DNA of 64,000 bases from Auanema rhodensis (GCA_964057225.1 OZ059899.1:12028001-12092000); one strand, 5' to 3'. Positions 9,777 through 64,000 are shown, counted from the stretch's first letter. A program made the numbers and translations. The notes: generated by a model from the sequence alone, not told the origin.

Positions 9777-9901
9777 CAACTTTTTACATTTTGTAATAAA
9801 GTATATCAAGATTCACATCATTTATTTGTTTGACTTATGGTTTTCCGCCAAAATGCTTGAAAGCTTTTAATCTGTATTGACCGTTGAAGTCGGATTTATA
9901 G

Positions 9902-10266: not shown

Positions 10267-10386
10267 ATAATAATTTAATAAATATAGTTTTGTTTATTGT
10301 TCTGCCTTTTCTTTATTACATAGTTTGGAAACTATTATAATATTTCTTCATTTCTTGATTACATTTTCATTATTTTAATTAAGAAA

Positions 10387-12568: not shown

Positions 12569-12795
12569 CTAGAATGGGGGAGGACCATTCACAAATTCTA
12601 AAGATGGATCAAAACTTCTTGCAAAATTGTTTAAAAGCTGACAGCAATACTCGTCATCGCAGTGGGGAACCAAGCAGGCGGCTCCGAGAAGCAGAACCAG
12701 CATAGCCTGAAAGATTGGAATGATTAGAAAATAATCAAATGTTTGTATATCTTACCTGCAAAGGCAATGCTGTTCTTAAAACCCGTCTCCATCTT
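12569..12795 (-). other. anc-1: KASH domain (TM helix + lumenal peptide ending PPPF), split by intron 12707-12755
   Basis: Hydrophobic ALPLQAMLVLLLGAACLVP, conserved Cys, terminal GPPPF*. Confidence 0.97.
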
Positions 12796-15700
12796 GAGCG
12801 TTGTCTACGGAATTGAGGATTAGCTAAAGCTTCATCGTCAGGCATTGGGGAGAATCTGCCTTCAGATGAATCCTCGGTAGACATTTCACTCGTATCGGCT
12901 TCGGAAGGAATTCCTTCAATTCCATGTTGTCGAAGCACTTGGTATGGATCATCAACATATAAAGCGGCTAATAGATTAGCAGCGGCGTCCACATCATATT
13001 CTCGTTCTTCGTTATCTTCACTACTGTCAGGGATATTTCTTAGTGATTCCAGAAGTTCATGGGCCCGAGCTTGAAGTCTCTCAAGTTCACTAGATGTGCT
13101 GCTTCTAATGAACTGACGACCATTAGCGCTGCGCTCCACAATAACCATCTGGTTATCAAGATGAGCAATTATATCGTTCAAAAGAGATTCGCGGCTCTGA
13201 AATCATGATATCAGGGATGTTTAGTTTAAGAAACTGCTTACCATTCGATTATTTCGTACGCCATCTTCACCATGAAGCTCTTCATGGCATTGATCAAGTT
13301 CGGTAGTAAGAATAGCTAGAGTTCGATTCAATTCTAGCTCTTCAGTAAGTTCGTTTGAGAGTTTTTGTAATAATTCCTGTACAAGGCATTCAATTAGAAA
13401 AAGAAAATAATTTCAACCAAACCTCAAGATTTCTTTCATTCGATTCTATATCAACATCTATGAAACGTTTTTCTTGTTCAGCCACATTCAGTGGATGAAG
13501 TAGAATGACAAAATCTTCAAGAGTTACAGCCTGACCTTTAGCTGTTTCATTAACATTAACAAGTTCCTGAAAAAAATCAAAATCATTATAGGTATGGAAA
13601 ACTGGGTATACCTTCATCACATTCATATATTCTTCTCCTTCTTCGGTGCTCATTAATTCTTTTTCTGCTGAAGACCTCAGTTCTCCAAGTACCAAATCAG
13701 CTTGTTTTTGAACCAATTCAAGCAGATCTATGAATTTTAGCCAAATGCTAGCACGATCGTGGAGGATTGGAACGATCTGGTTGGCAGCATCTATGGTTTG
13801 GCGGAGAGCTTGGACAGTTGGTTCATCAGATGGAGCAGAAGCAACAATGTCTTCAGCATGCTTCACTTCCTTGGCTATCACTTCAGCAGATGGTCTATAT
13901 TGCTCTGGAGATCCTTGGGCATCTTGAATAAGATTGTTAGCATCATTAACCAAGCGGGCAAGGTTGGATTGAGCAGGTACAGTCTTGGATTGAAGATCGG
14001 CAAGTTCCTTCTCCTTCTGTTGCTTCTCTTGCAGAGCAGCTTGGCGCTTCTGAAAAAATTGAATTAAGTTTGATGAAAATGAAAGATAAGTACTCACCTC
14101 AAGTAATTCTTGAGTAGTATTCAAGCGCTTCAGAAGCTCGTCATGTTCCTTCTTCTGTGCATCATCGAGAACATTGACATCTACGTTGGCAACATTCTCA
14201 CGGAGCTTCTCCAAAGCATCACGGTCTCTGGCAATTGCTTGTAGAAGCTGCTCATCAGACAATTCAGATGGTTCGTCTGTGTACTTGGATGTGATGGCAA
14301 GCAAGTTGTCCTCAGCATCCTTGCGAGCACTGTTGAAGGCAGCAAGGGCAGCCATCTTATCTCCAACCATGTCACCAAGTTGTTTCAGAAGTTCTTTCAG
14401 TTTTGATAAATTCCAAGAGCTCTTCTGGCGTTCTTCATCACCTTCAGGTCCTTCAGGAATTTCGTCCATTAGAGCTTCGAGACGTGCCTTGGCAGATTGA
14501 AGGTCTTCAAGCGAAGCCTGTTGTTCAGCAAGGGTCTCTGGCATCTTTTCAGGTCTGTTGTTGATGGATTGAGCAATAAGCTGGAGTTCAGGAGCGATCT
14601 GGTTGAGCTTAACAGAGTCGGCAAGAGTAGCTTGCTTATCAGCAGCATTACGAACTAACTCATCAACCTTTGACTTCAAGTCCTTCACAAGGTCGCTGTC
14701 GTTGACGACATCAGCGTTGTTGTTCTTCAACTCGTTCTCGTGGGCTTCGATGTTCTTGGCAAGCTGGTTAACTTCATCCTTAAGGTTGTCCATAACAGGA
14801 ACAGCTCTCTCGGAATCAGCAAGTTGAACGTTGTTCAAAGCATCGGTAAGTTGTTTCAATTGATTGTTCATGTTCTTGTTATCCTCACGAAGCTTGTGCT
14901 CTTGTGGAAGTGACTTCTCGAGGGGTGAAGCCAAGCTCTTAGCTTGTTCCTTCATCTCATGAGCAGTTCGAGCCAATTGTGGTGTTGAGCTCTCGATGTC
15001 AGCTACATCGATTGAAGCAATGATCTTCTGAAGCTTAGCAAGTTCCTCGTCAACGTTATCGATTGGTTGTGGTGATTGCAAAGCCTTGGCAATAGCTTCT
15101 ACCTCTTCCTTGTCCTTGTTCAACTTGGCTGTAACGTCGTTGAGCTTCTCTTCAGCTCGGACAGCTTCATCAAGTTGCTTGTCAGCCTTAGCGTTGAGGT
15201 CGTGTGTTCTGGCAATGAGCTTGTTCTTCTTCTCATCATCCATGCTGGCGGATGGTACAGCTTCAACGACGGCCATCAATTCAGCTAGTTTGGGTACGAT
15301 GTTCTTCTTGAATTCAGAGAGTTCATCAACAGATGCAAGTCCAGGTAAGACATCTTCAGCCTTCTTCAGCTCATCTTCAACATCCTTCAAAGCATTCTCA
15401 GCTCTCTTGGCTTCTTCTTCTTCGGCAGTCTTTTTGACCAAATCATCGGAAGTCTTATCAGACAACTGCTTCAAGTTGTTTTCGAGGTTGTCAGCCTTCT
15501 GGCGATCAGAAGCTGGAAGTGGAGCATCAGAAAGAGCAGCCAATTTGTCTGTCAAATCCTTGATCTTATCAAGCTTAGCTTGTAGAGCCTCAGCATTTTC
15601 ATCTTCAGCCTTATCAGCAGCCTTCTTTCCTTTACCCTTCTTACTCTTCTTTGCTGGAGCAGCAGGTTGGGCAAGAGCGTTAGCTTGATCATCGATTTCA

Positions 15701-18700
15701 GCCAATTGCTTTTGAGCAGCCTTTACAGCTTCGTTGTGTTTCTTCTTAGCTTCCTCAGCATCATCAAGCTTCTTGCGGAGCTCGTTTTGCTGATCTTCTG
15801 GAAGTTGGGCAAGGCTTCGGCGAAGTTCTTCAATCTGGTCTTCGGATAATTCTTCAATTGGCTTCTGTTGCAAGTCATTAACCTTGATGGTAATAAGTTG
15901 AATAACTTCTTCTTCTTCGGCTTGTTTCAAGCGATCCTTAGCTTCTTCAAGCGATTTCTCCAATTTAGGTAATTGTTCAGCCAGAGCAGCAATGATGTTG
16001 GCTTCGTCTGGCTTGACGTGCTTGTTTCCAGCTTGAAGTTCTTCCTTCTTCTCCTTGAGTACGTCCAATTGAGAACGAATAGCTGGGAGTTCGTGAGCTT
16101 CGAGGCTATCGATAACGTCAGCAGATGGTAGATCAGCCAAATGGCTGTTAAGCTGGTTGAGTTCTTTCTTGATGTGCTCAATGGAATCCATCAAGTTCTT
16201 CTCTTCTTCGATTTCATTGGTCAACTGGTCGAGAGCCTCAGCATATTGCTTATCAACCTGTTCAACATCAACATCTCTGAATCGTACGTCACTTAATGTG
16301 ATCTCCAAAGGATTGAGGAGCTCAGATAGACGTTGCATGTTGCGCATCTTATCAGCCAGGATGTCAGATGTTCGGCTTGCTTCACGCAATTTCTGGAGGT
16401 CGTCCTTGACTTCGTCCAGACTGCGTACAGGCTTATTGAGAACGGCATCAAGTGGTTCGTGGGAACGTTCAAGTTCATCATCAGTCTCATTACGAGCATC
16501 AACGAACTCGTCCCAGTTGGTGGCACGATCGTGGAGGATTGGAACGATCTGGTTGGCAGCATCTATGGTTTGGCGGAGAGCTTGGACAGTTGGTTCATCA
16601 GATGGAGCAGAAGCAACAATGTCTTCAGCATGCTTCACTTCCTTGGCTATCACTTCAGCAGATGGTCTATATTGCTCTGGAGATCCTTGGGCATCTTGAA
16701 TAAGATTGTTAGCATCATTAACCAAGCGGGCAAGGTTGGATTGAGCAGGTACAGTCTTGGATTGAAGATCGGCAAGTTCCTTCTCCTTCTGTTGCTTCTC
16801 TTGCAGAGCAGCTTGGCGCTTCTGAAAAAATTGAATTAAGTTTGATGAAAATGAAAGATAAGTACTCACCTCAAGTAATTCTTGAGTAGTATTCAAGCGC
16901 TTCAGAAGCTCGTCATGTTCCTTCTTCTGTGCATCATCGAGAACATTGACATCTACGTTGGCAACATTCTCACGGAGCTTCTCCAAAGCATCACGGTCTC
17001 TGGCAATTGCTTGTAGAAGCTGCTCATCAGACAATTCAGATGGTTCGTCTGTGTACTTGGATGTGATGGCAAGCAAGTTGTCTTCAGCATCCTTGCGAGC
17101 ACTGTTGAAGGCAGCAAGGGCAGCCATCTTATCTCCAACCATGTCACCAAGTTGTTTCAGAAGTTCTTTCAGTTTTGATAAATTCCAAGAGCTCTTCTGG
17201 CGTTCTTCATCACCTTCAGGTCCTTCAGGAATTTCGTCCATTAGAGCTTCGAGACGTGCCTTGGCAGATTGAAGGTCTTCAAGCGAAGCCTGTTGTTCAG
17301 CAAGGGTCTCTGGCATCTTTTCAGGTCTGTTGTTGATGGATTGAGCAATAAGCTGGAGTTCAGGAGCGATCTGGTTGAGCTTAACAGAGTCGGCAAGAGT
17401 AGCTTGCTTATCAGCAGCATTACGAACTAACTCATCAACCTTTGACTTCAAGTCCTTCACAAGGTCGCTGTCGTTGACGACATCAGCGTTGTTGTTCTTC
17501 AACTCGTTCTCGTGGGCTTCGATGTTCTTGGCAAGCTGGTTAACTTCATCCTTAAGGTTGTCCATAACAGGAACAGCTCTCTCGGAATCAGCAAGTTGAA
17601 CGTTGTTCAAAGCATCGGTAAGTTGTTTCAATTGATTGTTCATGTTCTTGTTATCCTCACGAAGCTTGTGCTCTTGTGGAAGTGACTTCTCGAGGGGTGA
17701 AGCCAAGCTCTTAGCTTGTTCCTTCATCTCATGAGCAGTTCGAGCCAATAGTGGTGTTGAGCTCTCGATGTCAGCTACATCGATTGAAGCAATGATCTTC
17801 TGAAGCTTAGCAAGTTCCTCGTCAACGTTATCGATTGGTTGTGGTGATTGCAAAGCCTTGGCAATAGCTTCTACCTCTTCCTTGTCCTTGTTCAACTTGG
17901 CTGTAACGTCGTTGAGCTTCTCTTCAGCTCGGACAGCTTCATCAAGTTGCTTGTCAGCCTTAGCGTTGAGGTCGTGTGTTCTGGCAATGAGCTTGTTCTT
18001 CTTCTCATCATCCATGCTGGCGGATGGTACAGCTTCAACGACGGCCATCAATTCAGCTAGTTTGGGTACGATGTTCTTCTTGAATTCAGAGAGTTCATCA
18101 ACAGATGCAAGTCCAGGTAAGACATCTTCAGCCTTCTTCAGCTCATCTTCAACATCCTTCAAAGCATTCTCAGCTCTCTTGGCTTCTTCTTCTTCGGCAG
18201 TCTTTTTGACCAAATCATCGGAAGTCTTATCAGACAACTGCTTCAAGTTGTTTTCGAGGTTGTCAGCCTTCTGGCGATCAGAAGCTGGAAGTGGAGCATC
18301 AGAAAGAGCAGCCAATTTGTCTGTCAAATCCTTGATCTTATCAAGCTTAGCTTGTAGAGCCTCAGCATTTTCATCTTCAGCCTTATCAGCAGCCTTCTTT
18401 CCTTTACCCTTCTTACTCTTCTTTGCTGGAGCAGCAGGTTGGGCAAGAGCGTTAGCTTGATCATCGATTTCAGCCAATTGCTTTTGAGCAGCCTTTACAG
18501 CTTCGTTGTGTTTCTTCTTAGCTTCCTCAGCATCATCAAGCTTCTTGCGGAGCTCGTTTTGCTGATCTTCTGGAAGTTGGGCAAGGCTTCGGCGAAGTTC
18601 TTCAATCTGGTCTTCGGATAATTCTTCAATTGGCTTCTGTTGCAAGTCATTAACCTTGATGGTAATAAGTTGAATAACTTCTTCTTCTTCGGCTTGTTTC

Positions 18701-21700
18701 AAGCGATCCTTAGCTTCTTCAAGCGATTTCTCCAATTTAGGTAATTGTTCAGCCAGAGCAGCAATGATGTTGGCTTCGTCTGGCTTGACGTGCTTGTTTC
18801 CAGCTTGAAGTTCTTCCTTCTTCTCCTTGAGTACGTCCAATTGAGAACGAATAGCTGGGAGTTCGTGAGCTTCGAGGCTATCGATAACGTCAGCAGATGG
18901 TAGATCAGCCAAATGGCTGTTAAGCTGGTTGAGTTCTTTCTTGATGTGCTCAATGGAATCCATCAAGTTCTTCTCTTCTTCGATTTCATTGGTCAACTGG
19001 TCGAGAGCCTCAGCATATTGCTTATCAACCTGTTCAACATCAACATCTCTGAATCGTACGTCACTTAATGTGATCTCCAAAGGATTGAGGAGCTCAGATA
19101 GACGTTGCATGTTGCGCATCTTATCAGCCAGGATGTCAGATGTTCGGCTTGCTTCACGCAATTTCTGGAGGTCGTCCTTGACTTCGTCCAGACTGCGTAC
19201 AGGCTTATTGAGAACGGCATCAAGTGGTTCGTGGGAACGTTCAAGTTCATCATCAGTCTCATTACGAGCATCAACGAACTCGTCCCAGTTGGTGGCACGA
19301 TCGTGGAGGATTGGAACGATCTGGTTGGCAGCATCTATGGTTTGGCGGAGAGCTTGGACAGTTGGTTCATCAGATGGAGCAGAAGCAACAATGTCTTCAG
19401 CATGCTTCACTTCCTTGGCTATCACTTCAGCAGATGGTCTATATTGCTCTGGAGATCCTTGGGCATCTTGAATAAGATTGTTAGCATCATTAACCAAGCG
19501 GGCAAGGTTGGATTGAGCAGGTACAGTCTTGGATTGAAGATCGGCAAGTTCCTTCTCCTTCTGTTGCTTCTCTTGCAGAGCAGCTTGGCGCTTCTGAAAA
19601 AATTGAATTAAGTTTGATGAAAATGAAAGATAAGTACTCACCTCAAGTAATTCTTGAGTAGTATTCAAGCGCTTCAGAAGCTCGTCATGTTCCTTCTTCT
19701 GTGCATCATCGAGAACATTGACATCTACGTTGGCAACATTCTCACGGAGCTTCTCCAAAGCATCACGGTCTCTGGCAATTGCTTGTAGAAGCTGCTCATC
19801 AGACAATTCAGATGGTTCGTCTGTGTACTTGGATGTGATGGCAAGCAAGTTGTCCTCAGCATCCTTGCGAGCACTATTGAAGGCAGCAAGGGCAGCCATC
19901 TTATCTCCAACCATGTCACCAAGTTGTTCCAGAAGTTCTTTCAGTTTTGATAAATTCCAAGAGCTCTTCTGGCGTTCTTCATCACCTTCAGGTCCTTCAG
20001 GAATTTTGTCCATTAGAGCTTCGAGACGTGCCTTGGCAGATTGAAGGTCTTCAAGCGAAGCCTGTTGTTCAGCAAGGGTCTCTGGCATCTTTTCAGGTCT
20101 GTTGTTGATGGATTGAGCAATAAGCTGGAGTTCAGGAGCGATCTGGTTGAGCTTAACAGAGTCGGCAAGAGTAGCTTGCTTATCAGCAGCATTACGAACT
20201 AACTCATCAACCTTTGACTTCAAGTCCTTCACAAGGTCGCTGTCGTTGACGACATCAGCGTTGTTGTTCTTCAACTCGTTCTCGTGGGCTTCGATGTTCT
20301 TGGCAAGCTGGTTAACTTCATCCTTAAGGTTGTCCATAACAGGAACAGCTCTCTCGGAATCAGCAAGTTGAACGTTGTTCAAAGCATCGGTAAGTTGTTT
20401 CAATTGATTGTTCATGTTCTTGTTATCCTCACGAAGCTTGTGCTCTTGTGGAAGTGACTTCTCGAGGGGTGAAGCCAAGCTCTTAGCTTGTTCCTTCATC
20501 TCATGAGCAGTTCGAGCCAATTGTGGTGTTGAGCTCTCGATGTCAGCTACATCGATTGAAGCAATGATCTTCTGAAGCTTAGCAAGTTCCTCGTCAACGT
20601 TATCGATTGGTTGTGGTGATTGCAAAGCCTTGGCAATAGCTTCTACCTCTTCCTTGTCCTTGTTCAACTTGGCTGTAACGTCGTTGAGCTTCTCTTCAGC
20701 TCGGACAGCTTCATCAAGTTGCTTGTCAGCCTTAGCGTTGAGGTCGTGTGTTCTGGCAATGAGCTTGTTCTTCTTCTCATCATCCATGCTGGCGGATGGT
20801 ACAGCTTCAACGACGGCCATCAATTCAGCTAGTTTGGGTACGATGTTCTTCTTGAATTCAGAGAGTTCATCAACAGATGCAAGTCCAGGTAAGACATCTT
20901 CAGCCTTCTTCAGCTCATCTTCAACATCCTTCAAAGCATTCTCAGCTCTCTTGGCTTCTTCTTCTTCGGCAGTCTTTTTGACCAAATCATCGGAAGTCTT
21001 ATCAGACAACTGCTTCAAGTTGTTTTCGAGGTTGTCAGCCTTCTGGCGATCAGAAGCTGGAAGTGGAGCATCAGAAAGAGCAGCCAATTTGTCTGTCAAA
21101 TCCTTGATCTTATCAAGCTTAGCTTGTAGAGCCTCAGCATTTTCATCTTCAGCCTTATCAGCAGCCTTCTTTCCTTTACCCTTCTTACTCTTCTTTGCTG
21201 GAGCAGCAGGTTGGGCAAGAGCGTTAGCTTGATCATCGATTTCAGCCAATTGCTTTTGAGCAGCCTTTACAGCTTCGTTGTGTTTCTTCTTAGCTTCCTC
21301 AGCATCATCAAGCTTCTTGCGGAGCTCGTTTTGCTGATCTTCTGGAAGTTGGGCAAGGCTTCGGCGAAGTTCTTCAATCTGGTCTTCGGATAATTCTTCA
21401 ATTGGCTTCTGTTGCAAGTCATTAACCTTGATGGTAATAAGTTGAATAACTTCTTCTTCTTCGGCTTGTTTCAAGCGATCCTTAGCTTCTTCAAGCGATT
21501 TCTCCAATTTAGGTAATTGTTCAGCCAGAGCAGCAATGATGTTGGCTTCGTCTGGCTTGACGTGCTTGTTTCCAGCTTGAAGTTCTTCCTTCTTCTCCTT
21601 GAGTACGTCCAATTGAGAACGAATAGCTGGGAGTTCGTGAGCTTCGAGGCTATCGATAACGTCAGCAGATGGTAGATCAGCCAAATGGCTGTTAAGCTGG

Positions 21701-24700
21701 TTGAGTTCTTTCTTGATGTGCTCAATGGAATCCATCAAGTTCTTCTCTTCTTCGATTTCATTGGTCAACTGGTCGAGAGCCTCAGCATATTGCTTATCAA
21801 CCTGTTCAACATCAACATCTCTGAATCGTACGTCACTTAATGTGATCTCCAAAGGATTGAGGAGCTCAGATAGACGTTGCATGTTGCGCATCTTATCAGC
21901 CAGGATGTCCGATGTTCGGCTTGCTTCACGCAATTTCTGGAGGTCGTCCTTGACTTCGTCCAGACTGCGTACAGGCTTATTGAGAACGGCATCAAGTGGT
22001 TCGTGGGAACGTTCAAGTTCATCATCAGTCTCATTACGAGCATCAACGAACTCGTCCCAGTTGGTGGCACGATCGTGGAGGATTGGAACGATCTGGTTGG
22101 CAGCATCTATGGTTTGGCGGAGAGCTTGGACAGTTGGTTCATCAGATGGAGCAGAAGCAACAATGTCTTCAGCATGCTTCACTTCCTTGGCTATCACTTC
22201 AGCAGATGGTCTATATTGCTCTGGAGATCCTTGGGCATCTTGAATAAGATTGTTAGCATCATTAACCAAGCGGGCAAGGTTGGATTGAGCAGGTACAGTC
22301 TTGGATTGAAGATCGGCAAGTTCCTTCTCCTTCTGTTGCTTCTCTTGCAGAGCAGCTTGGCGCTTCTGAAAAAATTGAATTAAGTTTGATGAAAATGAAA
22401 GATAAGTACTCACCTCAAGTAATTCTTGAGTAGTATTCAAGCGCTTCAGAAGCTCGTCATGTTCCTTCTTCTGTGCATCATCGAGAACATTGACATCTAC
22501 GTTGGCAACATTCTCACGGAGCTTCTCCAAAGCATCACGGTCTCTGGCAATTGCTTGTAGAAGCTGCTCATCAGACAATTCAGATGGTTCGTCTGTGTAC
22601 TTGGATGTGATGGCAAGCAAGTTGTCCTCAGCATCCTTGCGAGCACTGTTGAAGGCAGCAAGGGCAGCCATCTTATCTCCAACCATGTCACCAAGTTGTT
22701 TCAGAAGTTCTTTCAGTTTTGATAAATTCCAAGAGCTCTTCTGGCGTTCTTCATCACCTTCAGGTCCTTCAGGAATTTCGTCCATTAGAGCTTCGAGACG
22801 TGCCTTGGCAGATTGAAGGTCTTCAAGCGAAGCCTGTTGTTCAGCAAGGGTCTCTGGCATCTTTTCAGGTCTGTTGTTGATGGATTGAGCAATAAGCTGG
22901 AGTTCAGGAGCGATCTGGTTAAGCTTAACAGAGTCGGCAAGAGTAGCTTGCTTATCAGCAGCATTACGAACTAACTCATCAACCTTTGACTTCAAGTCCT
23001 TCACAAGGTCGCTGTCGTTGACGACATCAGCGTTGTTGTTCTTCAACTCGTTCTCGTGGGCTTCGATGTTCTTGGCAAGCTGGTTAACTTCATCCTTAAG
23101 GTTGTCCATAACAGGAACAGCTCTCTCGGAATCAGCAAGTTGAACGTTGTTCAAAGCATCGGTAAGTTGTTTCAATTGATTGTTCATGTTCTTGTTATCC
23201 TCACGAAGCTTGTGCTCTTGTGGAAGTGACTTCTCGAGGGGTGAAGCCAAGCTCTTAGCTTGTTCCTTCATCTCATGAGCAGTTCGAGCCAATTGTGGTG
23301 TTGAGCTCTCGATGTCAGCTACATCGATTGAAGCAATGATCTTCTGAAGCTTAGCAAGTTCCTCGTCAACGTTATCGATTGGTTGTGGTGATTGCAAAGC
23401 CTTGGCAATAGCTTCTACCTCTTCCTTGTCCTTGTTCAACTTGGCTGTAACGTCGTTGAGCTTCTCTTCAGCTCGGACAGCTTCATCAAGTTGCTTGTCA
23501 GCCTTAGCGTTGAGGTCGTGTGTTCTGGCAATGAGCTTGTTCTTCTTCTCATCATCCATGCTGGCGGATGGTACAGCTTCAACGATGGCCATCAATTCAG
23601 CTAGTTTGGGTACGATGTTCTTCTTGAATTCAGAGAGTTCATCAACAGATGCAAGTCCAGGTAAGACATCTTCAGCCTTCTTCAGCTCATCTTCAACATC
23701 CTTCAAAGCATTCTCAGCTCTCTTGGCTTCTTCTTCTTCGGCAGTCTTTTTGACCAAATCATCGGAAGTCTTATCAGACAACTGCTTCAAGTTGTTTTCG
23801 AGGTTGTCAGCCTTCTGGCGATCAGAAGCTGGAAGTGGAGCATCAGAAAGAGCAGCCAATTTGTCTGTCAAATCCTTGATCTTATCAAGCTTAGCTTGTA
23901 GAGCCTCAGCATTTTCATCTTCAGCCTTATCAGCAGCCTTCTTTCCTTTACCCTTCTTACTCTTCTTTGCTGGAGCAGCAGGTTGGGCAAGAGCGTTAGC
24001 TTGATCATCGATTTCAGCCAATTGCTTTTGAGCAGCCTTTACAGCTTCGTTGTGTTTCTTCTTAGCTTCCTCAGCATCATCAAGCTTCTTGCGGAGCTCG
24101 TTTTGCTGATCTTCTGGAAGTTGGGCAAGGCTTCGGCGAAGTTCTTCAATCTGGTCTTCGGATAATTCTTCAATTGGCTTCTGTTGCAAGTCATTAACCT
24201 TGATGGTAATAAGTTGAATAACTTCTTCTTCTTCGGCTTGTTTCAAGCGATCCTTAGCTTCTTCAAGCGATTTCTCCAATTTAGGTAATTGTTCAGCCAG
24301 AGCAGCAATGATGTTGGCTTCGTCTGGCTTGACGTGCTTGTTTCCAGCTTGAAGTTCTTCCTTCTTCTCCTTGAGTACGTTCAATTGAGAACGAATAGCT
24401 GGGAGTTCGTGAGCTTCGAGGCTATCGATAACGTCAGCAGATGGTAGATCAGCCAAATGGCTGTTAAGCTGGTTGAGTTCTTTCTTGATGTGCTCAATGG
24501 AATCCATCAAGTTCTTCTCTTCTTCGATTTCATTGGTCAACTGGTCGAGAGCCTCAGCATATTGCTTATCAACCTGTTCAACATCAACATCTCTGAATCG
24601 TACGTCACTTAATGTGATCTCCAAAGGATTGAGGAGCTCAGATAGACGTTGCATGTTGCGCATCTTATCAGCCAGGATGTCAGATGTTCGGCTTGCTTCA

Positions 24701-42700: not shown

Positions 42701-45700
42701 GGTGTTGAGCTCTCGATGTCAGCTACATCGATTGAAGCAATGATCTTCTGAAGCTTAGCAAGTTCCTCGTCAACGTTATCGATTGGTTGTGGTGATTGCA
42801 AAGCCTTGGCAATAGCTTCTACCTCTTCCTTGTCCTTGTTCAACTTGGCTGTAACGTCGTTGAGCTTCTCTTCAGCTCGGACAGCTTCATCAAGTTGCTT
42901 GTCAGCCTTAGCGTTGAGGTCGTGTGTTCTGGCAATAAGCTTGTTCTTCTTCTCATCATCCATGCTGGCGGATGGTACAGCTTCAACGACGGCCATCAAT
43001 TCAGCTAGTTTGGGTACGATGTTCTTCTTGAATTCAGAGAGTTCATCAACAGATGCAAGTCCAGGTAAGACATCTTCAGCCTTCTTCAGCTCATCTTCAA
43101 CATCCTTCAAAGCATTCTCAGCTCTCTTGGCTTCTTCTTCTTCGGCAGTCTTTTTGACCAAATCATCGGAAGTCTTATCAGACAACTGCTTCAAGTTGTT
43201 TTCGAGGTTGTCAGCCTTCTGGCGATCAGAAGCTGGAAGTGGAGCATCAGAAAGAGCAGCCAATTTGTCTGTCAAATCCTTGATCTTATCAAGCTTAGCT
43301 TGTAGAGCCTCAGCATTTTCATCTTCAGCCTTATCAGCAGCCTTCTTTCCTTTACCCTTCTTACTCTTCTTTGCTGGAGCAGCAGGTTGGGCAAGAGCGT
43401 TAGCTTGATCATCGATTTCAGCCAATTGCTTTTGAGCAGCCTTTACAGCTTCGTTGTGTTGCTTCTTAGCTTCCTCAGCATCATCAAGCTTCTTGCGGAG
43501 CTCGTTTTGCTGATCTTCTGGAAGTTGGGCAAGGCTTCGGCGAAGTTCTTCAATCTGGTCTTCGGATAATTCTTCAATTGGCTTCTGTTGCAAGTCATTA
43601 ACCTTGATGGTAATAAGTTGAATAACTTCTTCTTCTTCGGCTTGTTTCAAGCGATCCTTAGCTTCTTCAAGCGATTTCTCCAATTTAGGTAATTGTTCAG
43701 CCAGAGCAGCAATGATGTTGGCTTCGTCTGGCTTGACGTGCTTGTTTCCAGCTTGAAGTTCTTCCTTCTTCTCCTTGAGTACGTCCAATTGAGAACGAAT
43801 AGCTGGGAGTTCGTGAGCTTCGAGGCTATCGATAACGTCAGCAGATGGTAGATCAGCCAAATGGCTGTTAAGCTGGTTGAGTTCTTTCTTGATGTGCTCA
43901 ATGGAATCCATCAAGTTCTTCTCTTCTTCGATTTCATTGGTCAACTGGTCGAGAGCCTCAGCATATTGCTTATCAACCTGTTCAACATCAACATCTCTGA
44001 ATCGTACGTCACTTAATGTGATCTCCAAAGGATTGAGGAGCTCAGATAGACGTTGCATGTTGCGCATCTTATCAGCCAGGATGTCAGATGTTCGGCTTGC
44101 TTCACGCAATTTCTGGAGGTCGTCCTTGACTTCGTCCAGACTGCGTACAGGCTTATTGAGAACGGCATCAAGTGGTTCGTGGGAACGTTCAAGTTCATCA
44201 TCAGTCTCATTACGAGCATCAACGAACTCGTCCCAGTTGGTGGCACGATCGTGGAGGATTGGAACGATCTGGTTGGCAGCATCTATGGTTTGGCGGAGAG
44301 CTTGGACAGTTGGTTCATCAGATGGAGCAGAAGCAACAATGTCTTCAGCATGCTTCACTTCCTTGGCTATCACTTCAGCAGATGGTCTATATTGCTCTGG
44401 AGATCCTTGGGCATCTTGAATAAGATTGTTAGCATCATTAACCAAGCGGGCAAGGTTGGATTGAGCAGGTACAGTCTTGGATTGAAGATCGGCAAGTTCC
44501 TTCTCCTTCTGTTGCTTCTCTTGCAGAGCAGCTTGGCGCTTCTGAAAAAATTGAATTAAGTTTGATGAAAATGAAAGATAAGTACTCACCTCAAGTAATT
44601 CTTGAGTAGTATTCAAGCGCTTCAGAAGCTCGTCATGTTCCTTCTTCTGTGCATCATCGAGAACATTGACATCTACGTTGGCAACATTCTCACGGAGCTT
44701 CTCCAAAGCATCACGGTCTCTGGCAATTGCTTGTAGAAGCTGCTCATCAGACAATTCAGATGGTTCGTCTGTGTACTTGGATGTGATGGCAAGCAAGTTG
44801 TCCTCAGCATCCTTGCGAGCACTGTTGAAGGCAGCAAGGGCAGCCATCTTATCTCCAACCATGTCACCAAGTTGTTTCAGAAGTTCTTTCAGTTTTGATA
44901 AATTCCAAGAGCTCTTCTGGCGTTCTTCATCACCTTCAGGTCCTTCAGGAATTTCGTCCATTAGAGCTTCGAGACGTGCCTTGGCAGATTGAAGGTCTTC
45001 AAGCGAAGCCTGTTGTTCAGCAAGGGTCTCTGGCATCTTTTCAGGTCTGTTGTTGATGGATTGAGCAATAAGCTGGAGTTCAGGAGCGATCTGGTTGAGC
45101 TTAACAGAGTCGGCAAGAGTAGCTTGCTTATCAGCAGCATTACGAACTAACTCATCAACCTTTGACTTCAAGTCCTTCACAAGGTCGCTGTCGTTGACGA
45201 CATCAGCGTTGTTGTTCTTCAACTCGTTCTCGTGGGCTTCGATGTTCTTGGCAAGCTGGTTAACTTCATCCTTAAGGTTGTCCATAACAGGAACAGCTCT
45301 CTCGGAATCAGCAAGTTGAACGTTGTTCAAAGCATCGGTAAGTTGTTTCAATTGATTGTTCATGTTCTTGTTATCCTCACGAAGCTTGTGCTCTTGTGGA
45401 AGTGACTTCTCGAGGGGTGAAGCCAAGCTCTTAGCTTGTTCCTTCATCTCATGAGCAGTTCGAGCCAATTGTGGTGTTGAGCTCTCGATGTCAGCTACAT
45501 CGATTGAAGCAATGATCTTCTGAAGCTTAGCAAGTTCCTCGTCAACGTTATCGATTGGTTGTGGTGATTGCAAAGCCTTGGCAATAGCTTCTACCTCTTC
45601 CTTGTCCTTGTTCAACTTGGCTGTAACGTCGTTGAGCTTCTCTTCAGCTCGGACAGCTTCATCAAGTTGCTTGTCAGCCTTAGCGTTGAGGTCGTGTGTT

Positions 45701-48700
45701 CTGGCAATGAGCTTGTTCTTCTTCTCATCATCCATGCTGGCGGATGGTACAGCTTCAACGACGGCCATCAATTCAGCTAGTTTGGGTACGATGTTCTTCT
45801 TGAATTCAGAGAGTTCATCAACAGATGCAAGTCCAGGTAAGACATCTTCAGCCTTCTTCAGCTCATCTTCAACATCCTTCAAAGCATTCTCAGCTCTCTT
45901 GGCTTCTTCTTCTTCGGCAGTCTTTTTGACCAAATCATCGGAAGTCTTATCAGACAACTGCTTCAAGTTGTTTTCGAGGTTGTCAGCCTTCTGGCGATCA
46001 GAAGCTGGAAGTGGAGCATCAGAAAGAGCAGCCAATTTGTCTGTCAAATCCTTGATCTTATCAAGCTTAGCTTGTAGAGCCTCAGCATTTTCATCTTCAG
46101 CCTTATCAGCAGCCTTCTTTCCTTTACCCTTCTTACTCTTCTTTGCTGGAGCAGCAGGTTGGGCAAGAGCGTTAGCTTGATCATCGATTTCAGCCAATTG
46201 CTTTTGAGCAGCCTTTACAGCTTCGTTGTGTTTCTTCTTAGCTTCCTCAGCATCATCAAGCTTCTTGCGGAGCTCGTTTTGCTGATCTTCTGGAAGTTGG
46301 GCAAGGCTTCGGCGAAGTTCTTCAATCTGGTCTTCGGATAATTCTTCAATTGGCTTCTGTTGCAAGTCATTAACCTTGATGGTAATAAGTTGAATAACTT
46401 CTTCTTCTTCGGCTTGTTTCAAGCGATCCTTAGCTTCTTCAAGCGATTTCTCCAATTTAGGTAATTGTTCAGCCAGAGCAGCAATGATGTTGGCTTCGTC
46501 TGGCTTGACGTGCTTGTTTCCAGCTTGAAGTTCTTCCTTCTTCTCCTTGAGTACGTTCAATTGAGAACGAATAGCTGGGAGTTCGTGAGCTTCGAGGCTA
46601 TCGATAACGTCAGCAGATGGTAGATCAGCCAAATGGCTGTTAAGCTGGTTGAGTTCTTTCTTGATGTGCTCAATGGAATCCATCAAGTTCTTCTCTTCTT
46701 CGATTTCATTGGTCAACTGGTCGAGAGCCTCAGCATATTGCTTATCAACCTGTTCAACATCAACATCTCTGAATCGTACGTCACTTAATGTGATCTCCAA
46801 AGGATTGAGGAGCTCAGATAGACGTTGCATGTTGCGCATCTTATCAGCCAGGATGTCAGATGTTCGGCTTGCTTCACGCAATTTCTGGAGGTCGTCCTTG
46901 ACTTCGTCCAGACTGCGTACAGGCTTATTGAGAACGGCATCAAGTGGTTCGTGGGAACGTTCAAGTTCATCATCAGTCTCATTACGAGCATCAACGAACT
47001 CGTCCCAGTTGGTGGCACGATCGTGGAGGATTGGAACGATCTGGTTGGCAGCATCTATGGTTTGGCGGAGAGCTTGGACAGTTGGTTCATCAGATGGAGC
47101 AGAAGCAACAATGTCTTCAGCATGCTTCACTTCCTTGGCTATCACTTCAGCAGATGGTCTATATTGCTCTGGAGATCCTTGGGCATCTTGAATAAGATTG
47201 TTAGCATCATTAACCAAGCGGGCAAGGTTGGATTGAGCAGGTACAGTCTTGGATTGAAGATCGGCAAGTTCCTTCTCCTTCTGTTGCTTCTCTTGCAGAG
47301 CAGCTTGGCGCTTCTGAAAAAATTGAATTAAGTTTGATGAAAATGAAAGATAAGTACTCACCTCAAGTAATTCTTGAGTAGTATTCAAGCGCTTCAGAAG
47401 CTCGTCATGTTCCTTCTTCTGTGCATCATCGAGAACATTGACATCTACGTTGGCAACATTCTCACGGAGCTTCTCCAAAGCATCACGGTCTCTGGCAATT
47501 GCTTGTAGAAGCTGCTCATCAGACAATTCAGATGGTTCGTCTGTGTACTTGGATGTGATGGCAAGCAAGTTGTCCTCAGCATCCTTGCGAGCACTGTTGA
47601 AGGCAGCAAGGGCAGCCATCTTATCTCCAACCATGTCACCAAGTTGTTTCAGAAGTTCTTTCAGTTTTGATAAATTCCAAGAGCTCTTCTGGCGTTCTTC
47701 ATCACCTTCAGGTCCTTCAGGAATTTCGTCCATTAGAGCTTCGAGACGTGCCTTGGCAGATTGAAGGTCTTCAAGCGAAGCCTGTTGTTCAGCAAGGGTC
47801 TCTGGCATCTTTTCAGGTCTGTTGTTGATGGATTGAGCAATAAGCTGGAGTTCAGGAGCGATCTGGTTGAGCTTAACAGAGTCGGCAAGAGTAGCTTGCT
47901 TATCAGCAGCATTACGAACTAACTCATCAACCTTTGACTTCAAGTCCTTCACAAGGTCGCTGTCGTTGACGACATCAGCGTTGTTGTTCTTCAACTCGTT
48001 CTCGTGGGCTTCGATGTTCTTGGCAAGCTGGTTAACTTCATCCTTAAGGTTGTCCATAACAGGAACAGCTCTCTCGGAATCAGCAAGTTGAACGTTGTTC
48101 AAAGCATCGGTAAGTTGTTTCAATTGATTGTTCATGTTCTTGTTATCCTCACGAAGCTTGTGCTCTTGTGGAAGTGACTTCTCGAGGGGTGAAGCCAAGC
48201 TCTTAGCTTGTTCCTTCATCTCATGAGCAGTTCGAGCCAATTGTGGTGTTGAGCTCTCGATGTCAGCTACATCGATTGAAGCAATGATCTTCTGAAGCTT
48301 AGCAAGTTCCTCGTCAACGTTATCGATTGGTTGTGGTGATTGCAAAGCCTTGGCAATAGCTTCTACCTCTTCCTTGTCCTTGTTCAACTTGGCTGTAACG
48401 TCGTTGAGCTTCTCTTCAGCTCGGACAGCTTCATCAAGTTGCTTGTCAGCCTTAGCGTTGAGGTCGTGTGTTCTGGCAATGAGCTTGTTCTTCTTCTCAT
48501 CATCCATGCTGGCGGATGGTACAGCTTCAACGACGGCCATCAATTCAGCTAGTTTGGGTACGATGTTCTTCTTGAATTCAGAGAGTTCATCAACAGATGC
48601 AAGTCCAGGTAAGACATCTTCAGCCTTCTTCAGCTCATCTTCAACATCCTTCAAAGCATTCTCAGCTCTCTTGGCTTCTTCTTCTTCGGCAGTCTTTTTG

Positions 48701-51700
48701 ACCAAATCATCGGAAGTCTTATCAGACAACTGCTTCAAGTTGTTTTCGAGGTTGTCAGCCTTCTGGCGATCAGAAGCTGGAAGTGGAGCATCAGAAAGAG
48801 CAGCCAATTTGTCTGTCAAATCCTTGATCTTATCAAGCTTAGCTTGTAGAGCCTCAGCATTTTCATCTTCAGCCTTATCAGCAGCCTTCTTTCCTTTACC
48901 CTTCTTACTCTTCTTTGCTGGAGCAGCAGGTTGGGCAAGAGCGTTAGCTTGATCATCGATTTCAGCCAATTGCTTTTGAGCAGCCTTTACAGCTTCGTTG
49001 TGTTTCTTCTTAGCTTCCTCAGCATCATCAAGCTTCTTGCGGAGCTCGTTTTGCTGATCTTCTGGAAGTTGGGCAAGGCTTCGGCGAAGTTCTTCAATCT
49101 GGTCTTCGGATAATTCTTCAATTGGCTTCTGTTGCAAGTCATTAACCTTGATGGTAATAAGTTGAATAACTTCTTCTTCTTCGGCTTGTTTCAAGCGATC
49201 CTTAGCTTCTTCAAGCGATTTCTCCAATTTAGGTAATTGTTCAGCCAGAGCAGCAATGATGTTGGCTTCGTCTGGCTTGACGTGCTTGTTTCCAGCTTGA
49301 AGTTCTTCCTTCTTCTCCTTGAGTACGTCCAATTGAGAACGAATAGCTGGGAGTTCGTGAGCTTCGAGGCTATCGATAACGTCAGCAGATGGTAGATCAG
49401 CCAAATGGCTGTTAAGCTGGTTGAGTTCTTTCTTGATGTGCTCAATGGAATCCATCAAGTTCTTCTCTTCTTCGATTTCATTGGTCAACTGGTCGAGAGC
49501 CTCAGCATATTGCTTATCAACCTGTTCAACATCAACATCTCTGAATCGTACGTCACTTAATGTGATCTCCAAAGGATTGAGGAGCTCAGATAGACGTTGC
49601 ATGTTGCGCATCTTATCAGCCAGGATGTCAGATGTTCGGCTTGCTTCACGCAATTTCTGGAGGTCGTCCTTGACTTCGTCCAGACTGCGTACAGGCTTAT
49701 TGAGAACGGCATCAAGTGGTTCGTGGGAACGTTCAAGTTCATCATCAGTCTCATTACGAGCATCAACGAACTCGTCCCAGTTGGTGGCACGATCGTGGAG
49801 GATTGGAACGATCTGGTTGGCAGCATCTATGGTTTGGCGGAGAGCTTGGACAGTTGGTTCATCAGATGGAGCAGAAGCAACAATGTCTTCAGCATGCTTC
49901 ACTTCCTTGGCTATCACTTCAGCAGATGGTCTATATTGCTCTGGAGATCCTTGGGCATCTTGAATAAGATTGTTAGCATCATTAACCAAGCGGGCAAGGT
50001 TGGATTGAGCAGGTACAGTCTTGGATTGAAGATCGGCAAGTTCCTTCTCCTTCTGTTGCTTCTCTTGCAGAGCAGCTTGGCGCTTCTGAAAAAATTGAAT
50101 TAAGTTTGATGAAAATGAAAGATAAGTACTCACCTCAAGTAATTCTTGAGTAGTATTCAAGCGCTTCAGAAGCTCGTCATGTTCCTTCTTCTGTGCATCA
50201 TCGAGAACATTGACATCTACGTTGGCAACATTCTCACGGAGCTTCTCCAAAGCATCACGGTCTCTGGCAATTGCTTGTAGAAGCTGCTCATCAGACAATT
50301 CAGATGGTTCGTCTGTGTACTTGGATGTGATGGCAAGCAAGTTGTCCTCAGCATCCTTGCGAGCACTATTGAAGGCAGCAAGGGCAGCCATCTTATCTCC
50401 AACCATGTCACCAAGTTGTTCCAGAAGTTCTTTCAGTTTTGATAAATTCCAAGAGCTCTTCTGGCGTTCTTCATCACCTTCAGGTCCTTCAGGAATTTCG
50501 TCCATTAGAGCTTCGAGACGTGCCTTGGCAGATTGAAGGTCTTCAAGCGAAGCCTGTTGTTCAGCAAGGGTCTCTGGCATCTTTTCAGGTCTGTTGTTGA
50601 TGGATTGAGCAATAAGCTGGAGTTCAGGAGCGATCTGGTTGAGCTTAACAGAGTCGGCAAGAGTAGCTTGCTTATCAGCAGCATTACGAACTAACTCATC
50701 AACCTTTGACTTCAAGTCCTTCACAAGGTCGCTGTCGTTGACGACATCAGCGTTGTTGTTCTTCAACTCGTTCTCGTGGGCTTCGATGTTCTTGGCAAGC
50801 TGGTTAACTTCATCCTTAAGGTTGTCCATAACAGGAACAGCTCTCTCGGAATCAGCAAGTTGAACGTTGTTCAAAGCATCGGTAAGTTGTTTCAATTGAT
50901 TGTTCATGTTCTTGTTATCCTCACGAAGCTTGTGCTCTTGTGGAAGTGACTTCTCGAGGGGTGAAGCCAAGCTCTTAGCTTGTTCCTTCATCTCATGAGC
51001 AGTTCGAGCCAATTGTGGTGTTGAGCTCTCGATGTCAGCTACATCGATTGAAGCAATGATCTTCTGAAGCTTAGCAAGTTCCTCGTCAACGTTATCGATT
51101 GGTTGTGGTGATTGCAAAGCCTTGGCAATAGCTTCTACCTCTTCCTTGTCCTTGTTCAACTTGGCTGTAACGTCGTTGAGCTTCTCTTCAGCTCGGACAG
51201 CTTCATCAAGTTGCTTGTCAGCCTTAGCGTTGAGGTCGTGTGTTCTGGCAATGAGCTTGTTCTTCTTCTCATCATCCATGCTGGCGGATGGTACAGCTTC
51301 AACGACGGCCATCAATTCAGCTAGTTTGGGTACGATGTTCTTCTTGAATTCAGAGAGTTCATCAACAGATGCAAGTCCAGGTAAGACATCTTCAGCCTTC
51401 TTCAGCTCATCTTCAACATCCTTCAAAGCATTCTCAGCTCTCTTGACTTCTTCTTCTTCGGCAGTCTTTTTGACCAAATCATCGGAAGTCTTATCAGACA
51501 ACTGCTTCAAGTTGTTTTCGAGGTTGTCAGCCTTCTGGCGATCAGAAGCTGGAAGTGGAGCATCAGAAAGAGCAGCCAATTTGTCTGTCAAATCCTTGAT
51601 CTTATCAAGCTTAGCTTGTAGAGCCTCAGCATTTTCATCTTCAGCCTTATCAGCAGCCTTCTTTCCTTTACCCTTCTTACTCTTCTTTGCTGGAGCAGCA

Positions 51701-54700
51701 GGTTGGGCAAGAGCGTTAGCTTGATCATCGATTTCAGCCAATTGCTTTTGAGCAGCCTTTACAGCTTCGTTGTGTTTCTTCTTAGCTTCCTCAGCATCAT
51801 CAAGCTTCTTGCGGAGCTCGTTTTGCTGATCTTCTGGAAGTTGGGCAAGGCTTCGGCGAAGTTCTTCAATCTGGTCTTCGGATAATTCTTCAATTGGCTT
51901 CTGTTGCAAGTCATTAACCTTGATGGTAATAAGTTGAATAACTTCTTTTTCGGCAGTCTTTTTGGCCAAATCATCGGAAGTCTTATCAGACAACTGCTTC
52001 AAGTTGTTTTCGAGGTTGTCAGCCTTCTGGCGATCAGAAGCTGGAAGTGGAGCATCAGAAAGAGCAGCCAATTTTTCTATCAAATCCTTGATCTTATCAA
52101 GCTTAGCTTGTAGAGCCTCAGCATTTTCATCTTCAGCCTTATCAGCAGCCTTCTTTCCTTTACCCTTCTTACTCTTCTTTGCTGGAGCAGCAGGTTGGGC
52201 AAGAGCGTTGGCTTGATCATCGATTTCAGCCAATTGCTTTTGAGCAGCCTTTACAGCTTGGTCGTGTTTCTTCTTAGCTTCCTTAGCATCATCAAGCTTC
52301 TTGCGGAGTTCATTCTGTCTAGATTCTGGCAGTTCTTCAATAAGTTTCTCAAGCTCATCGAATTGATTCTGTGGTATATCTTGAATTTGAATCTGTTCCT
52401 TTACTTTCTGTATATTATTTAGTACATCTTCCATATCTCTTAAGTGAATGATTTCCTGTACGCTCTGTTGAATATCGTCAGCTGCATTCTGGATATTGGT
52501 AAATCGTTCTTGAAGATCTTTCGGAATTTGATCTTCATTTGCATATAATTTCAAATCATTAATGTTTGATTTGATTTCTTCCAATTTTTGCTGAGCTGGT
52601 TCAACATTCTTCTGAGGTGATTCATTAATAGTTTTCTTCAGATCATCCAACTTCTTCTCAACGGAATCACATGTATTATCAACAAATTCAATATTATCAA
52701 TCTTATCTTGGATGGAGGCTTGCACGGACTTCAACTCTTCTTCAGCATTAGATGCATTGGCAATGGAATCTGTATGAACATCATCAGATTCTGCAGGATC
52801 CATGCTGTCAATAACATCTTTAACATTGAGCATAATACTATTGGCTTCATTCAAAGAGTTGAGAGTATTTTTCAATTCTTCCTTAGATTCAACAAGCTTG
52901 TTATCAACTTCTGATGCTTTAGCCACTGCTTCTTCCACAGCATGTAACAGTTCTTGAACTTTTACTCCTTTTTCTTCATTAATACCGGCAAGTAAAGCAA
53001 CAGTATCGTCATTAAGCTTGTCATCTATAGCATAGTACACTCCCTCAAGGCATTGCTCCACTTCAGATAAGCTGTCAATGCAATCAATATCATTCAATAC
53101 AGATACTAAATCTTTCAAATGATAGATTTCCTCTCGTTGCTCATCTAACGTATTCTTAGCTTGTTCTAGTTTTTCTTCTGTTGCATCAGGGTTCTCGCAC
53201 ACTACACTGATATCATCAATAACTGATCTTACATTTTGAATTCGTGCCATAATATCATCAGTGTCTAATATTTCAGCATCCATTTCTTCAGCATCACCAA
53301 ATTGACTAGTTGTCTGTTCAGGTACTTTCGCCGAAGATTCAAGCACATCCGCATTGGATTGACTTTGAATTTCACTATCCAATGCTTCTGATTTCTTTAA
53401 TAATGATTGTAAGTGTTCAATGGCCTCATCCTGTTCTTTCAACAGGTCACTCTCAGTGTAAGTATTTTGATCTGCTACTTCAGTCGATGATGGCATTGCA
53501 TCAAATCTGTCATCCAAGGCGGCTTGAACGCCGTTGTGCTCCTCGATAAGGTTGTAGACGTTTTCAAGGAGATGGTTGTTTTCAGGATGTTGCTGTACTT
53601 CAGCTTCAACCTGATCTCTGAGATTGTTCAACTGGCTTTCAGCCAACTTCAGAAGATCGGCCGCATTAGAAAGATCTGCAGGTGTGGTTGTAGGATCACA
53701 CTCAATCTCACTAGCTTGTCCAATCTTTTCTCGGATTTCAGCCATTTGAACTTCGGCAGGTCCATGTTCAGCACCCTAGAATATGAAATATAAAAATTTA
53801 AACGAAAGAGTAATTACCTGAAGCTTATCAGACTGGGCTTCTTCGGGATTCAATCTGTCATCCAAGGCGGCTTGAACGCCGTTGTGCTCCTCGATAAGGT
53901 TGTAGACGTTTTCAAGGAGATGGTTGTTTTCAGGATGTTGCTGTACTTCAGCTTCAACCTGATCTCTGAGATTGTTCAACTGGCTTTCAGCCAACTTCAG
54001 AAGATCGGCCGCATTAGAAAGATCAGCAGGTGTGGTTGTAGGATCACACTCAATCTCACTAGCTTGTCCAATCTTTTCTCGGATTTCAGCCATTTGAACT
54101 TCGGCAGGTCCATGTTCAGCACCCTAGAATATGAAATATAAAAATTTAAACGAAAGAGTAATTACCTGAAGCTTATCAGACTGGGCTTCTTCGGGATTCA
54201 ATCTGTCATCCAAGGCGGCTTGAACGCCGTTGTGCTCCTCGATAAGGTTGTAGACGTTTTCAAGGAGATGGTTGTTTTCAGGATGTTGCTGTACTTCAGC
54301 TTCAACCTGATCTCTGAGATTGTTCAACTGGCTTTCAGCCAACTTCAGAAGATCGGCCGCATTAGAAAGATCAGCAGGTGTGGTTGTAGGATCACACTCA
54401 ATCTCACTAGCTTGTCCAATCTTTTCTCGGATTTCAGCCATTTGAACTTCGGCAGGTCCATGTTCAGCACCCTAGAATATGAAATATAAAAATTTAAACG
54501 AAAGAGTAATTACCTGAAGCTTATCAGACTGGGCTTCTTCGGGATTCAATCTGTCATCCAAGGCGGCTTGAACGCCGTTGTGCTCCTCGATAAGGTTGTA
54601 GACGTTTTCAAGGAGATGGTTGTTTTCAGGATGTTGCTGTACTTCAGCTTCAACCTGATCTCTGAGATTGTTCAACTGGCTTTCAGCCAATTTCAGAAGA

Positions 54701-63700: not shown

Positions 63701-64000
63701 GTAGTGTTCTTTCGAAGCGAGCAGTAGCACTTTCTAGTTGCAGACGAATAATATCCCATCTAGAAGTAAAGTATATATTAAATATAAATAATATAATTAT
63801 ACTTTTTATCGATATCAGCTAATTCTTGTACAGTAAAATTCATTCGGCTACTCATAATGGTACTAAACAGACTACGATATTCAACGAATTCTTTGCGAAC
63901 ACGGAAAAACACCTGAAACATTACATATTTTTAGGATTCATGTGAAACTGTAGAACTTATGACAACAAAGAGGAAACAATGCTCACCTGTTGCTGTTCGT
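12569..64000 (-). CDS. anc-1: Giant nesprin-family KASH protein ANC-1 (multi-exon; 5' end and presumed CH domains beyond the right edge)
   Basis: Terminal exons encode RWRRVLRTALPLQ-AMLVLLLGAACLVPHCDDEYCCQLLNNFARSFDPSLEFVNGPPPF* (TAG at 12569-12571), essentially the C. elegans ANC-1 KASH. Contains ~900-aa helical tandem repeats. Upstream exons splice in frame from ~63,900 to 53,775. Confidence 0.97.
13752..51947 (-). repeat. anc-1: Coding tandem array of ~13.8 units x 2772 bp (908 aa + 48-nt intron), >99% identical
   Basis: Shadow ORFs recur every 2772 bp. 14 copies of the intron start at 14050 + n*2772 (last at 50086). Only about a dozen scattered SNPs were seen. Confidence 0.97.
51948..52310 (-). 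repeat. anc-1: Extra partial copy of the first segment of the unit (ELRKKLDD...KKTAE), offset 492 bp from its neighbour, slightly diverged
   Basis: Shadow ORFs at 51703 and 52195 are 492 bp apart. Differences: DDAKE vs DDAEE, HDQ vs HNE, LIEK vs LTDK, LAKK vs LVKK. Confidence 0.9.
53504..54782 (-). repeat. anc-1: Second tandem array of ~3.7 units x 348 bp (306-nt phase-0 exon, 102 aa, + 42-nt intron)
   Basis: ORFs at 53776, 54124 and 54472 are spaced by 348 bp; introns GTAATT...TTCTAG at 53776-53817, 54124-54165 and 54472-54513. Confidence 0.95.
57839..57868. repeat. (GA)n microsatellite in an anc-1 intron
   Basis: gagaaagagagaaagagagagagagagaga. Confidence 0.8.
58428..58457. repeat. (GAT)7(GAG)3 microsatellite in an anc-1 intron
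   Basis: gatgatgatgatgatgatgatgaggaggag read directly. Confidence 0.8.

What the first reader, a model, noticed from the sequence alone, without database searches (positions are those of the whole stretch)
13752..51947. Super-sized ANC-1: ~14 near-identical 908-aa repeats, ~15,000-aa KASH protein
Seen: ~13.8 units of 2772 bp with 14 copies of the unit intron; hand-summed spliced length in the window is ~15,000 aa before the off-window N-terminus. Known: C. elegans ANC-1 is ~8,500 aa with six 903-aa repeats, and its repeats contribute to anchoring nuclei and organelles. Inference: repeat number here is more than doubled, and copy number may act as an evolvable molecular ruler for tether length or cell/syncytium size.
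Basis: partly seen in the sequence, partly recalled or inferred. Interest (0 to 1): 0.85.

Follow-up and report, generated by a model that had tools for sequence, protein, structure and literature searches.

The report
Extra-long nematode nuclear anchor protein ANC-1
This roundworm's gene for ANC-1, the giant protein that holds nuclei and other organelles in place, carries about 14 near-identical repeats instead of the six known from C. elegans, but other worms range from about 3 to about 21, so repeat number is a variable family trait and not shown to be a size ruler.

Summary
Observation confirmed. The minus strand holds an intact anc-1 orthologue: 13.78 tandem units of 2,772 bp (13746-51952), no indels, 18 variable columns, 14 identical 48-bp introns, 908 aa per unit, and a canonical KASH tail. 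A 43-exon model gives 15,134 codons in the window; about 350 more lie outside (about 15,500 aa). The unit intron is supported by its conserved position in four other nematodes. Read depth could not be tested, and 15.2 kb of the array has no distinguishing variant, so the count is at least 11, most likely 14.

The size is not unique. Public assemblies show 20.7 units in Pristionchus mayeri (one stop-free frame of 19,646 codons, missed by its annotation), about 10 in Parelaphostrongylus tenuis, 5-7 in several species and 3-4 in Dirofilaria immitis, with units of 581-1,436 aa. Copies cluster within species, as expected from unequal crossing-over and gene conversion. The largest worm has the shortest array, which argues against a ruler for body or syncytium size. 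Best reading: a spectrin-like rod that needs several repeats and whose number drifts above that minimum.

The parts
12569..64000 (-). anc-1 orthologue as far as it lies in the window: 43 exons, 15,134 codons including the stop; about 350 N-terminal residues (expected CH domains) lie beyond 64000
13746..51952 (-). Array of 13.78 units of 2,772 bp (2,724-bp exon, 908 aa, plus 48-bp intron), encoding about 12,500 aa of spectrin-like rod
14098..16821 (-). One complete unit exon (most 3' full copy), phase 0-0; ANC-1 spectrin-like Pfam families; all-helical model
14050..14097 (-). Unit intron, 48 bp, in frame and stop-free; 14 identical copies every 2,772 bp up to 50086-50133; position conserved in C. 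auriculariae, C. nigoni, P. tenuis and S. carpocapsae
27734..42936 (.). 15.2-kb stretch with no variant that tells copies apart (units 7-10 equal the consensus); the place where the assembled count could be wrong
12756..13745 (-). Single-copy region between array and membrane anchor (F2 of C. elegans ANC-1); exons 13612-14049 (in part), 13423-13566, 13242-13376, 12756-13196
12569..12706 (-). Last exon: transmembrane helix and KASH peptide ending in PPPF and stop
   Evidence: PF10541, E 8.8e-20; 91-96% identical to the tails of four orthologues
51953..64000 (-). Non-array N-terminal part, about 2,290 codons in 25 exons; colinear with C. nigoni ANC-1 residues 359-1698
53504..54786 (-). Second, small homogenised array in the same gene: 348-bp unit (306-bp phase 0-0 exon, 102 aa, plus 42-bp intron), 3.7 copies, 99% matches

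Best explanation
This is the species' anc-1 gene. It encodes a tail-anchored protein of about 15,500 aa (about 1.7 MDa). The C-terminal helix inserts in the ER and outer nuclear membrane and the KASH peptide binds a SUN protein; the cytoplasmic part is a chain of spectrin-like three-helix bundles, about 8 per unit and about 115 in the array (roughly 0.55 micrometre if extended at 5 nm per bundle; an estimate). As in C. elegans it most likely holds nuclei, ER and mitochondria in place (inferred from orthology). The array is kept uniform by unequal crossing-over and gene conversion, which also change the number of units. Selection keeps the frame and needs more than one unit; above that minimum the number varies among lineages with no sign of being set by body size. 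Shown: anatomy, orthology, intron, within-species uniformity, range of counts in assemblies. Inferred: function, recombination mechanism, lack of fine selection on length.
For: Pfam and colinearity with orthologues. Helical model whose best solved-structure matches are spectrin and plectin repeat triplets (Foldseek probability 0.85-0.97, none with E <= 0.001). Identical introns in all 14 copies, variants shared by non-adjacent units (2+5, 3+14, 4+12), differences concentrated at the array ends. Copies group by species while species differ by about 50% in the best-kept segment. Synonymous changes mildly enriched: 8 of 18 columns against 21-28% expected, p 0.02-0.1. Counts elsewhere: P. mayeri 20.7 x 845 aa, S. 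carpocapsae 6.5 x 1,254, H. trifolii 5.3 x 794, C. nigoni at least 7 x 903, D. immitis 3-4 x 1,436, A. besseyi 5-6 x about 590, P. tenuis about 10 diverged units. One repeat gives a partial defect and none a stronger one in C. elegans (PMC8139857). Four RNA-like runs hold 0.69-0.71 of the sampled words, close to the 0.67 expected from exons alone.
Against: No read depth or spanning-read test here. All comparative counts come from assemblies that may collapse or inflate arrays. Ten species with unequal assembly quality cannot exclude selection on length for some other cell trait. No protein-level evidence that all 14 units are spliced into one mRNA.
Confidence: 0.7

Rival explanations
1. Rod length is tuned by selection: copy number acts as a ruler for tether reach or for hypodermal syncytium thickness or organelle spacing.
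For: [quoted passage not shown] Rod length varies about five-fold among species.
Against: D. immitis, by far the largest worm compared (own knowledge of sizes), has the shortest array in two assemblies; similar-sized free-living worms differ three-fold. Unit length itself differs (581-1,436 aa). ANC-1 is spread over the ER and does not need its CH domains (PMC8139857).
Confidence: 0.15
2. The gene is real but the count of 14 is off by some units, through mis-assembly in the invariant middle or because strains differ in copy number.
For: Units 7-10 are identical and 15.2 kb carry no distinguishing variant, about the length of a typical accurate long read (own knowledge).
Against: Nine units carry their own variants and unit 13 is bounded by variants 3.8 kb apart, so at least 11 units are needed unless the variants are errors; variants shared between distant units and the absence of indels in 38 kb argue against errors. 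An independent assembly of another species shows a longer array whose largest invariant gap is only 4.3 kb.
Confidence: 0.25
3. The genomic array is long but the protein made is shorter or variable, because every unit exon is phase 0-0 and any number can be skipped in frame; length would be set by splicing.
For: All 13 full unit exons and the 306-bp exons are symmetric. Nesprins and C. elegans anc-1 have several isoforms.
Against: The introns are only 48 bp, which favours intron definition and makes skipping of 2.7-kb exons unlikely (own knowledge). P. mayeri and D. destructor lack this intron, and the P. mayeri array is one exon, so splicing cannot be the general control.
Confidence: 0.08

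Closest known systems
C. elegans ANC-1 (ZK973.6)
   Same: Domain order (N-terminal region, homogenised repeats of about 900 aa, short F2, transmembrane helix, KASH ending in PPPF); repeats nearly identical at DNA level (PMC8139857); same Pfam families.
   Different: 13.8 against 6 repeats; about 15,500 against 8,545 aa; unit only about 34% identical to the Caenorhabditis unit (C. nigoni); extra 3.7 x 102-aa array upstream.
Pristionchus mayeri anc-1 locus (GCA_036245805.1, locus L007)
   Same: Long, indel-poor, more than 99% identical array of the homologous unit in front of a KASH exon.
   Different: 20.7 units of 845 aa, no intron in the unit, one stop-free frame of 19,646 codons; the public gene model (2,114 aa) treats the array as an intron.
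Nesprin-1/-2 Giant and Drosophila MSP-300
   Same: CH domains, spectrin-repeat rod, KASH; nuclear and organelle anchorage.
   Different: Their spectrin repeats are old and diverged (more than 50 repeats, PMC8139857), not a recently homogenised higher-order array. Lengths of about 8,800, 6,900 and up to about 13,500 aa (own knowledge) are below this protein.

Membership tests
ANC-1 / giant KASH proteins | C-terminal transmembrane helix followed by a short luminal KASH peptide ending in PPPX, with Cys at -23 and an aromatic residue at -7 | tested here: met
   PF10541 E 8.8e-20; translation; the position rule is own knowledge, read off the sequence
ANC-1 / giant KASH proteins | Long spectrin-like helical rod | tested here: met
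   PF24611 1e-32, PF24615 2e-15, PF24531 2e-5; all-helical models; best but non-significant fold matches are spectrin repeat triplets
ANC-1 / giant KASH proteins | Tandem repeats of about 900 aa, nearly identical within the species | tested here: met
ANC-1 / giant KASH proteins | Colinear homology with ANC-1 outside the repeats | tested here: met
   Exon-wise tblastn matches to C. nigoni and C. brenneri residues 359-1700 and to the last 500 residues of four orthologues
ANC-1 / giant KASH proteins | Two N-terminal calponin-homology domains | not testable with these tools
   The window ends at about residue 350 of the orthologues; the CH region lies outside it
ANC-1 / giant KASH proteins | Expression as a spliced mRNA and full-length protein | tested here: inconclusive
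ANC-1 / giant KASH proteins | SUN-dependent nuclear-envelope localisation and organelle anchorage | not testable with these tools
   Needs experiment

The most novel reading that the evidence does not exclude
ANC-1 rod length is a selected, lineage-tuned trait: nematodes adjust the reach or mesh size of their ER-anchored cytoplasmic scaffold between about 0.2 and 0.8 micrometre by expanding one homogenised exon block, giving KASH proteins of 15,000-21,000 aa, longer than any I know to be described.
Probability: 0.15. Interest if true: 0.7.

Novelty: new variant of a known kind. Interest (0 to 1): 0.42.

Why it matters
The 'six repeats' of ANC-1 are a C. elegans number, not a family constant. 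Natural versions with 14 and 21 repeats show that a KASH protein can be about twice the known nematode size or more, and give natural test points for whether rod length matters to organelle anchorage, a question left open by the C. elegans deletion series (six, one, none). It also shows that gene annotation hides these proteins (P. mayeri model of 2,114 aa; split models in five other species). It does not change what ANC-1 is or how it is thought to work.

Tried and rejected

Spliced model: not joined for any search. Exons were searched one by one by reference; one search used the natural stop-free genomic frame by reference.

Both proteins were used only locally in the tree, run in the same batch. 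The fold search of the whole unit gave nothing significant.

Rejected: that the 48-bp segment is coding (unit 924 aa), because orthologues have a phase-0 intron at that point or run through without the 16 residues; that the array is non-coding satellite or pure assembler duplication (stop-free frame, Pfam hits, unit-specific and shared variants); that the expansion is unique (P. mayeri). Species identity was not established: run names are coded and no protein above about 50% identity was found. Starr and Han 2002 is not held. Paper searches for ANC-1 with concerted evolution, gene conversion, number of repeats, Pristionchus, C. briggsae or largest protein found nothing relevant; subscription journals are mostly not covered.

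Full report
What is in the window. A 2,772-bp period dominates. It runs from 13746 to 51952, 13.78 units, with sharp ends. The minus strand has one stop-free frame of 13,461 codons from 53775 to 13393. Units differ by 0-7 substitutions and no indels; there are 18 variable columns, and units 7, 8, 9, 10 and 13 (counted from the 3' end) equal the consensus. Each unit holds a 48-bp AT-rich segment with a GTGAGT donor and TTTTCAG acceptor, identical in all 14 copies. An exon-by-exon model read from the sequence has 43 exons, all introns GT-AG, continuous phases and no internal stop: 15,134 codons, of which 12,512 are in the array.

Identity. The last exon is a KASH domain (PF10541, E 8.8e-20) and the unit matches three ANC-1 spectrin-like Pfam families. 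Exons outside the array are colinear with C. nigoni and C. brenneri ANC-1, and the window edge falls at about residue 350, so about 350 aa with the CH domains lie outside and the full protein is about 15,500 aa. AlphaFold models from the single sequence are all-helical with alternating short and long helices. A 300-aa piece matches plectin and spectrin repeat triplets best, though not significantly, which suggests about 8 bundles per unit. This is the anc-1 orthologue of a clade V-type nematode; the species was not identified.

Is the intron real? It is in frame and stop-free, so the sequence alone allows a 924-aa unit. Orthologous loci settle this: C. auriculariae, C. nigoni, P. tenuis and S. 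carpocapsae have a phase-0 GT-AG intron at the same point (about 50 bp to several kb), and P. mayeri and D. destructor run through without an equivalent of the 16 residues. The 908-aa unit stands.

Is the count real? Internal evidence gives a floor. Nine units have their own variants and unit 13 is bounded by variants 3.8 kb apart, so at least 11 units are needed; the only long unanchored stretch is 15.2 kb, 27734-42936. Variants shared by distant units (2+5, 3+14, 4+12), the mild excess of synonymous changes (p 0.02-0.1) and the lack of indels argue that they are biological. The count is therefore well above six, most likely 14, uncertain by a few units. Expression: four runs guessed to be RNA hold 0.69-0.71 of the sampled words of 10600-16517, against 0.92-0.99 for the best DNA runs; exons of anc-1 plus a small neighbour predict about 0.67. 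This is weak support for transcription.

Comparison across nematodes. A HMMER search with the unit found 121 relatives, about 35% identical over the full unit; cluster look-ups named them and their loci were fetched. Counts: C. elegans 6 x 903 aa (PMC8139857); C. nigoni at least 7 x 903, ending at an assembly gap; C. brenneri model 3 x 904; C. auriculariae at least 4; S. carpocapsae 6.5 x 1,254 aa at 99.9%; H. trifolii 5.3 x 794; D. destructor about 6 x 1,430, estimated from two split models of 4,618 and 7,928 aa; A. besseyi 5-6 x 581-596; D. immitis 3-4 x 1,436 in two assemblies; P. tenuis 8 units seen and about 10 implied by the Pfam lists, only 82-86% identical except one recent pair; M. 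hapla no homogenised array; P. mayeri 20.7 x 845 aa, intronless, in one stop-free frame of 19,646 codons followed by KASH. The P. mayeri array is better anchored than the window's (largest invariant gap 4.3 kb) and shows a six-unit block duplication (units 3, 4, 5, 8 equal 9, 10, 11, 14). The Cylicocyclus locus showed one marker and was uninformative. In a tree of the best-kept 114-aa segment, copies group by species for the window, P. mayeri, C. auriculariae, C. nigoni, D. immitis, S. carpocapsae and H. trifolii, and the diverged P. tenuis copies mix with single strongylid copies (P. mayeri's last partial copy, A. besseyi and M. hapla were not included, and the deep branches are unsupported). 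The window's array is thus at the high end of a wide range but is not the record.

How it most likely works. By orthology, the protein is inserted by its tail into ER and outer nuclear membrane and its rod helps hold nuclei, ER and mitochondria in place; in C. elegans the transmembrane helix and repeats matter more than the KASH peptide or CH domains (PMC8139857; PMC12422203). The array is kept uniform and changes in number by unequal crossing-over and gene conversion (inferred from identical introns, shared variants and divergent ends). That P. tenuis, with unit introns of 1-6 kb, has diverged copies fits the idea that long variable introns break this process (one case only). C. elegans deletions show that one repeat is too few; they do not show that length is measured. 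Against a size ruler, the heartworm, far larger than the others (own knowledge), has the shortest array, and worms of about 1 mm span 5,400 to 17,500 aa. I put the threshold-and-drift reading at 0.7, the ruler at 0.15, splicing-controlled length at 0.08, and a count off by several units at 0.25 (not exclusive of the others).

Novelty. The protein family, the near-identical repeats and their role are known. I found no paper on variation in ANC-1 repeat number or on versions above 15,000 aa, within a library that lacks most subscription journals. The scan had no earlier ANC-1 note in this genome. It is a new variant of a known kind: useful to KASH specialists and directly testable in C. elegans, but a quantitative change shared with other nematodes. 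Interest 0.42.

Noticed in passing
L007:9815-70773 (Pristionchus mayeri, GCA_036245805.1): anc-1 with 20.7 intronless units of 2,535 bp in one stop-free frame of 19,646 codons; the public model (2,114 aa) treats the 52-kb array as an intron. Probably a KASH protein of about 21,000 aa.
   Followed up: yes
L001 and L011 (Parelaphostrongylus tenuis): About 10 units only 82-86% identical, separated by unit introns of 1-6 kb, with one recent 98.7% pair: homogenisation seems to have lapsed where the intron is long.
   Followed up: partly
window 53504-54786: Second homogenised array inside anc-1: 3.7 copies of a 306-bp exon plus 42-bp intron (102 aa), not matched in the orthologues compared.
   Followed up: partly
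window 58361-60135: 1,775-bp intron with a GC-rich patch near 59580-59680, at about residue 970 of the orthologues, roughly where the shorter C. elegans anc-1b isoform should begin; a candidate internal promoter. No first exon was identified.
   Followed up: no
window 14098-50085: All full unit exons are phase 0-0 and a multiple of three, so skipping or back-splicing of whole units would keep the frame.
   Followed up: no
window about 1690-2950 (-), 3213-8680 (+), about 9900-10270 (+), 10861-10934 (-), about 11250-11770 (+): Neighbours read from the sequence: calumenin-like EF-hand gene, PH-domain oxysterol-binding protein gene, SDHAF4-like gene (GGP..PEPTRFGDWE motif), tRNA-Ala(AGC), and a small unnamed gene convergent with anc-1. 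No shared neighbours with the anc-1 loci fetched from other species.
   Followed up: no
   Followed up: no
P0013 (KAG5640015.1): An ANC-1 repeat protein filed under the fungus Asterophora parasitica on a 2.6-kb contig, most likely nematode contamination of that assembly.
   Followed up: no
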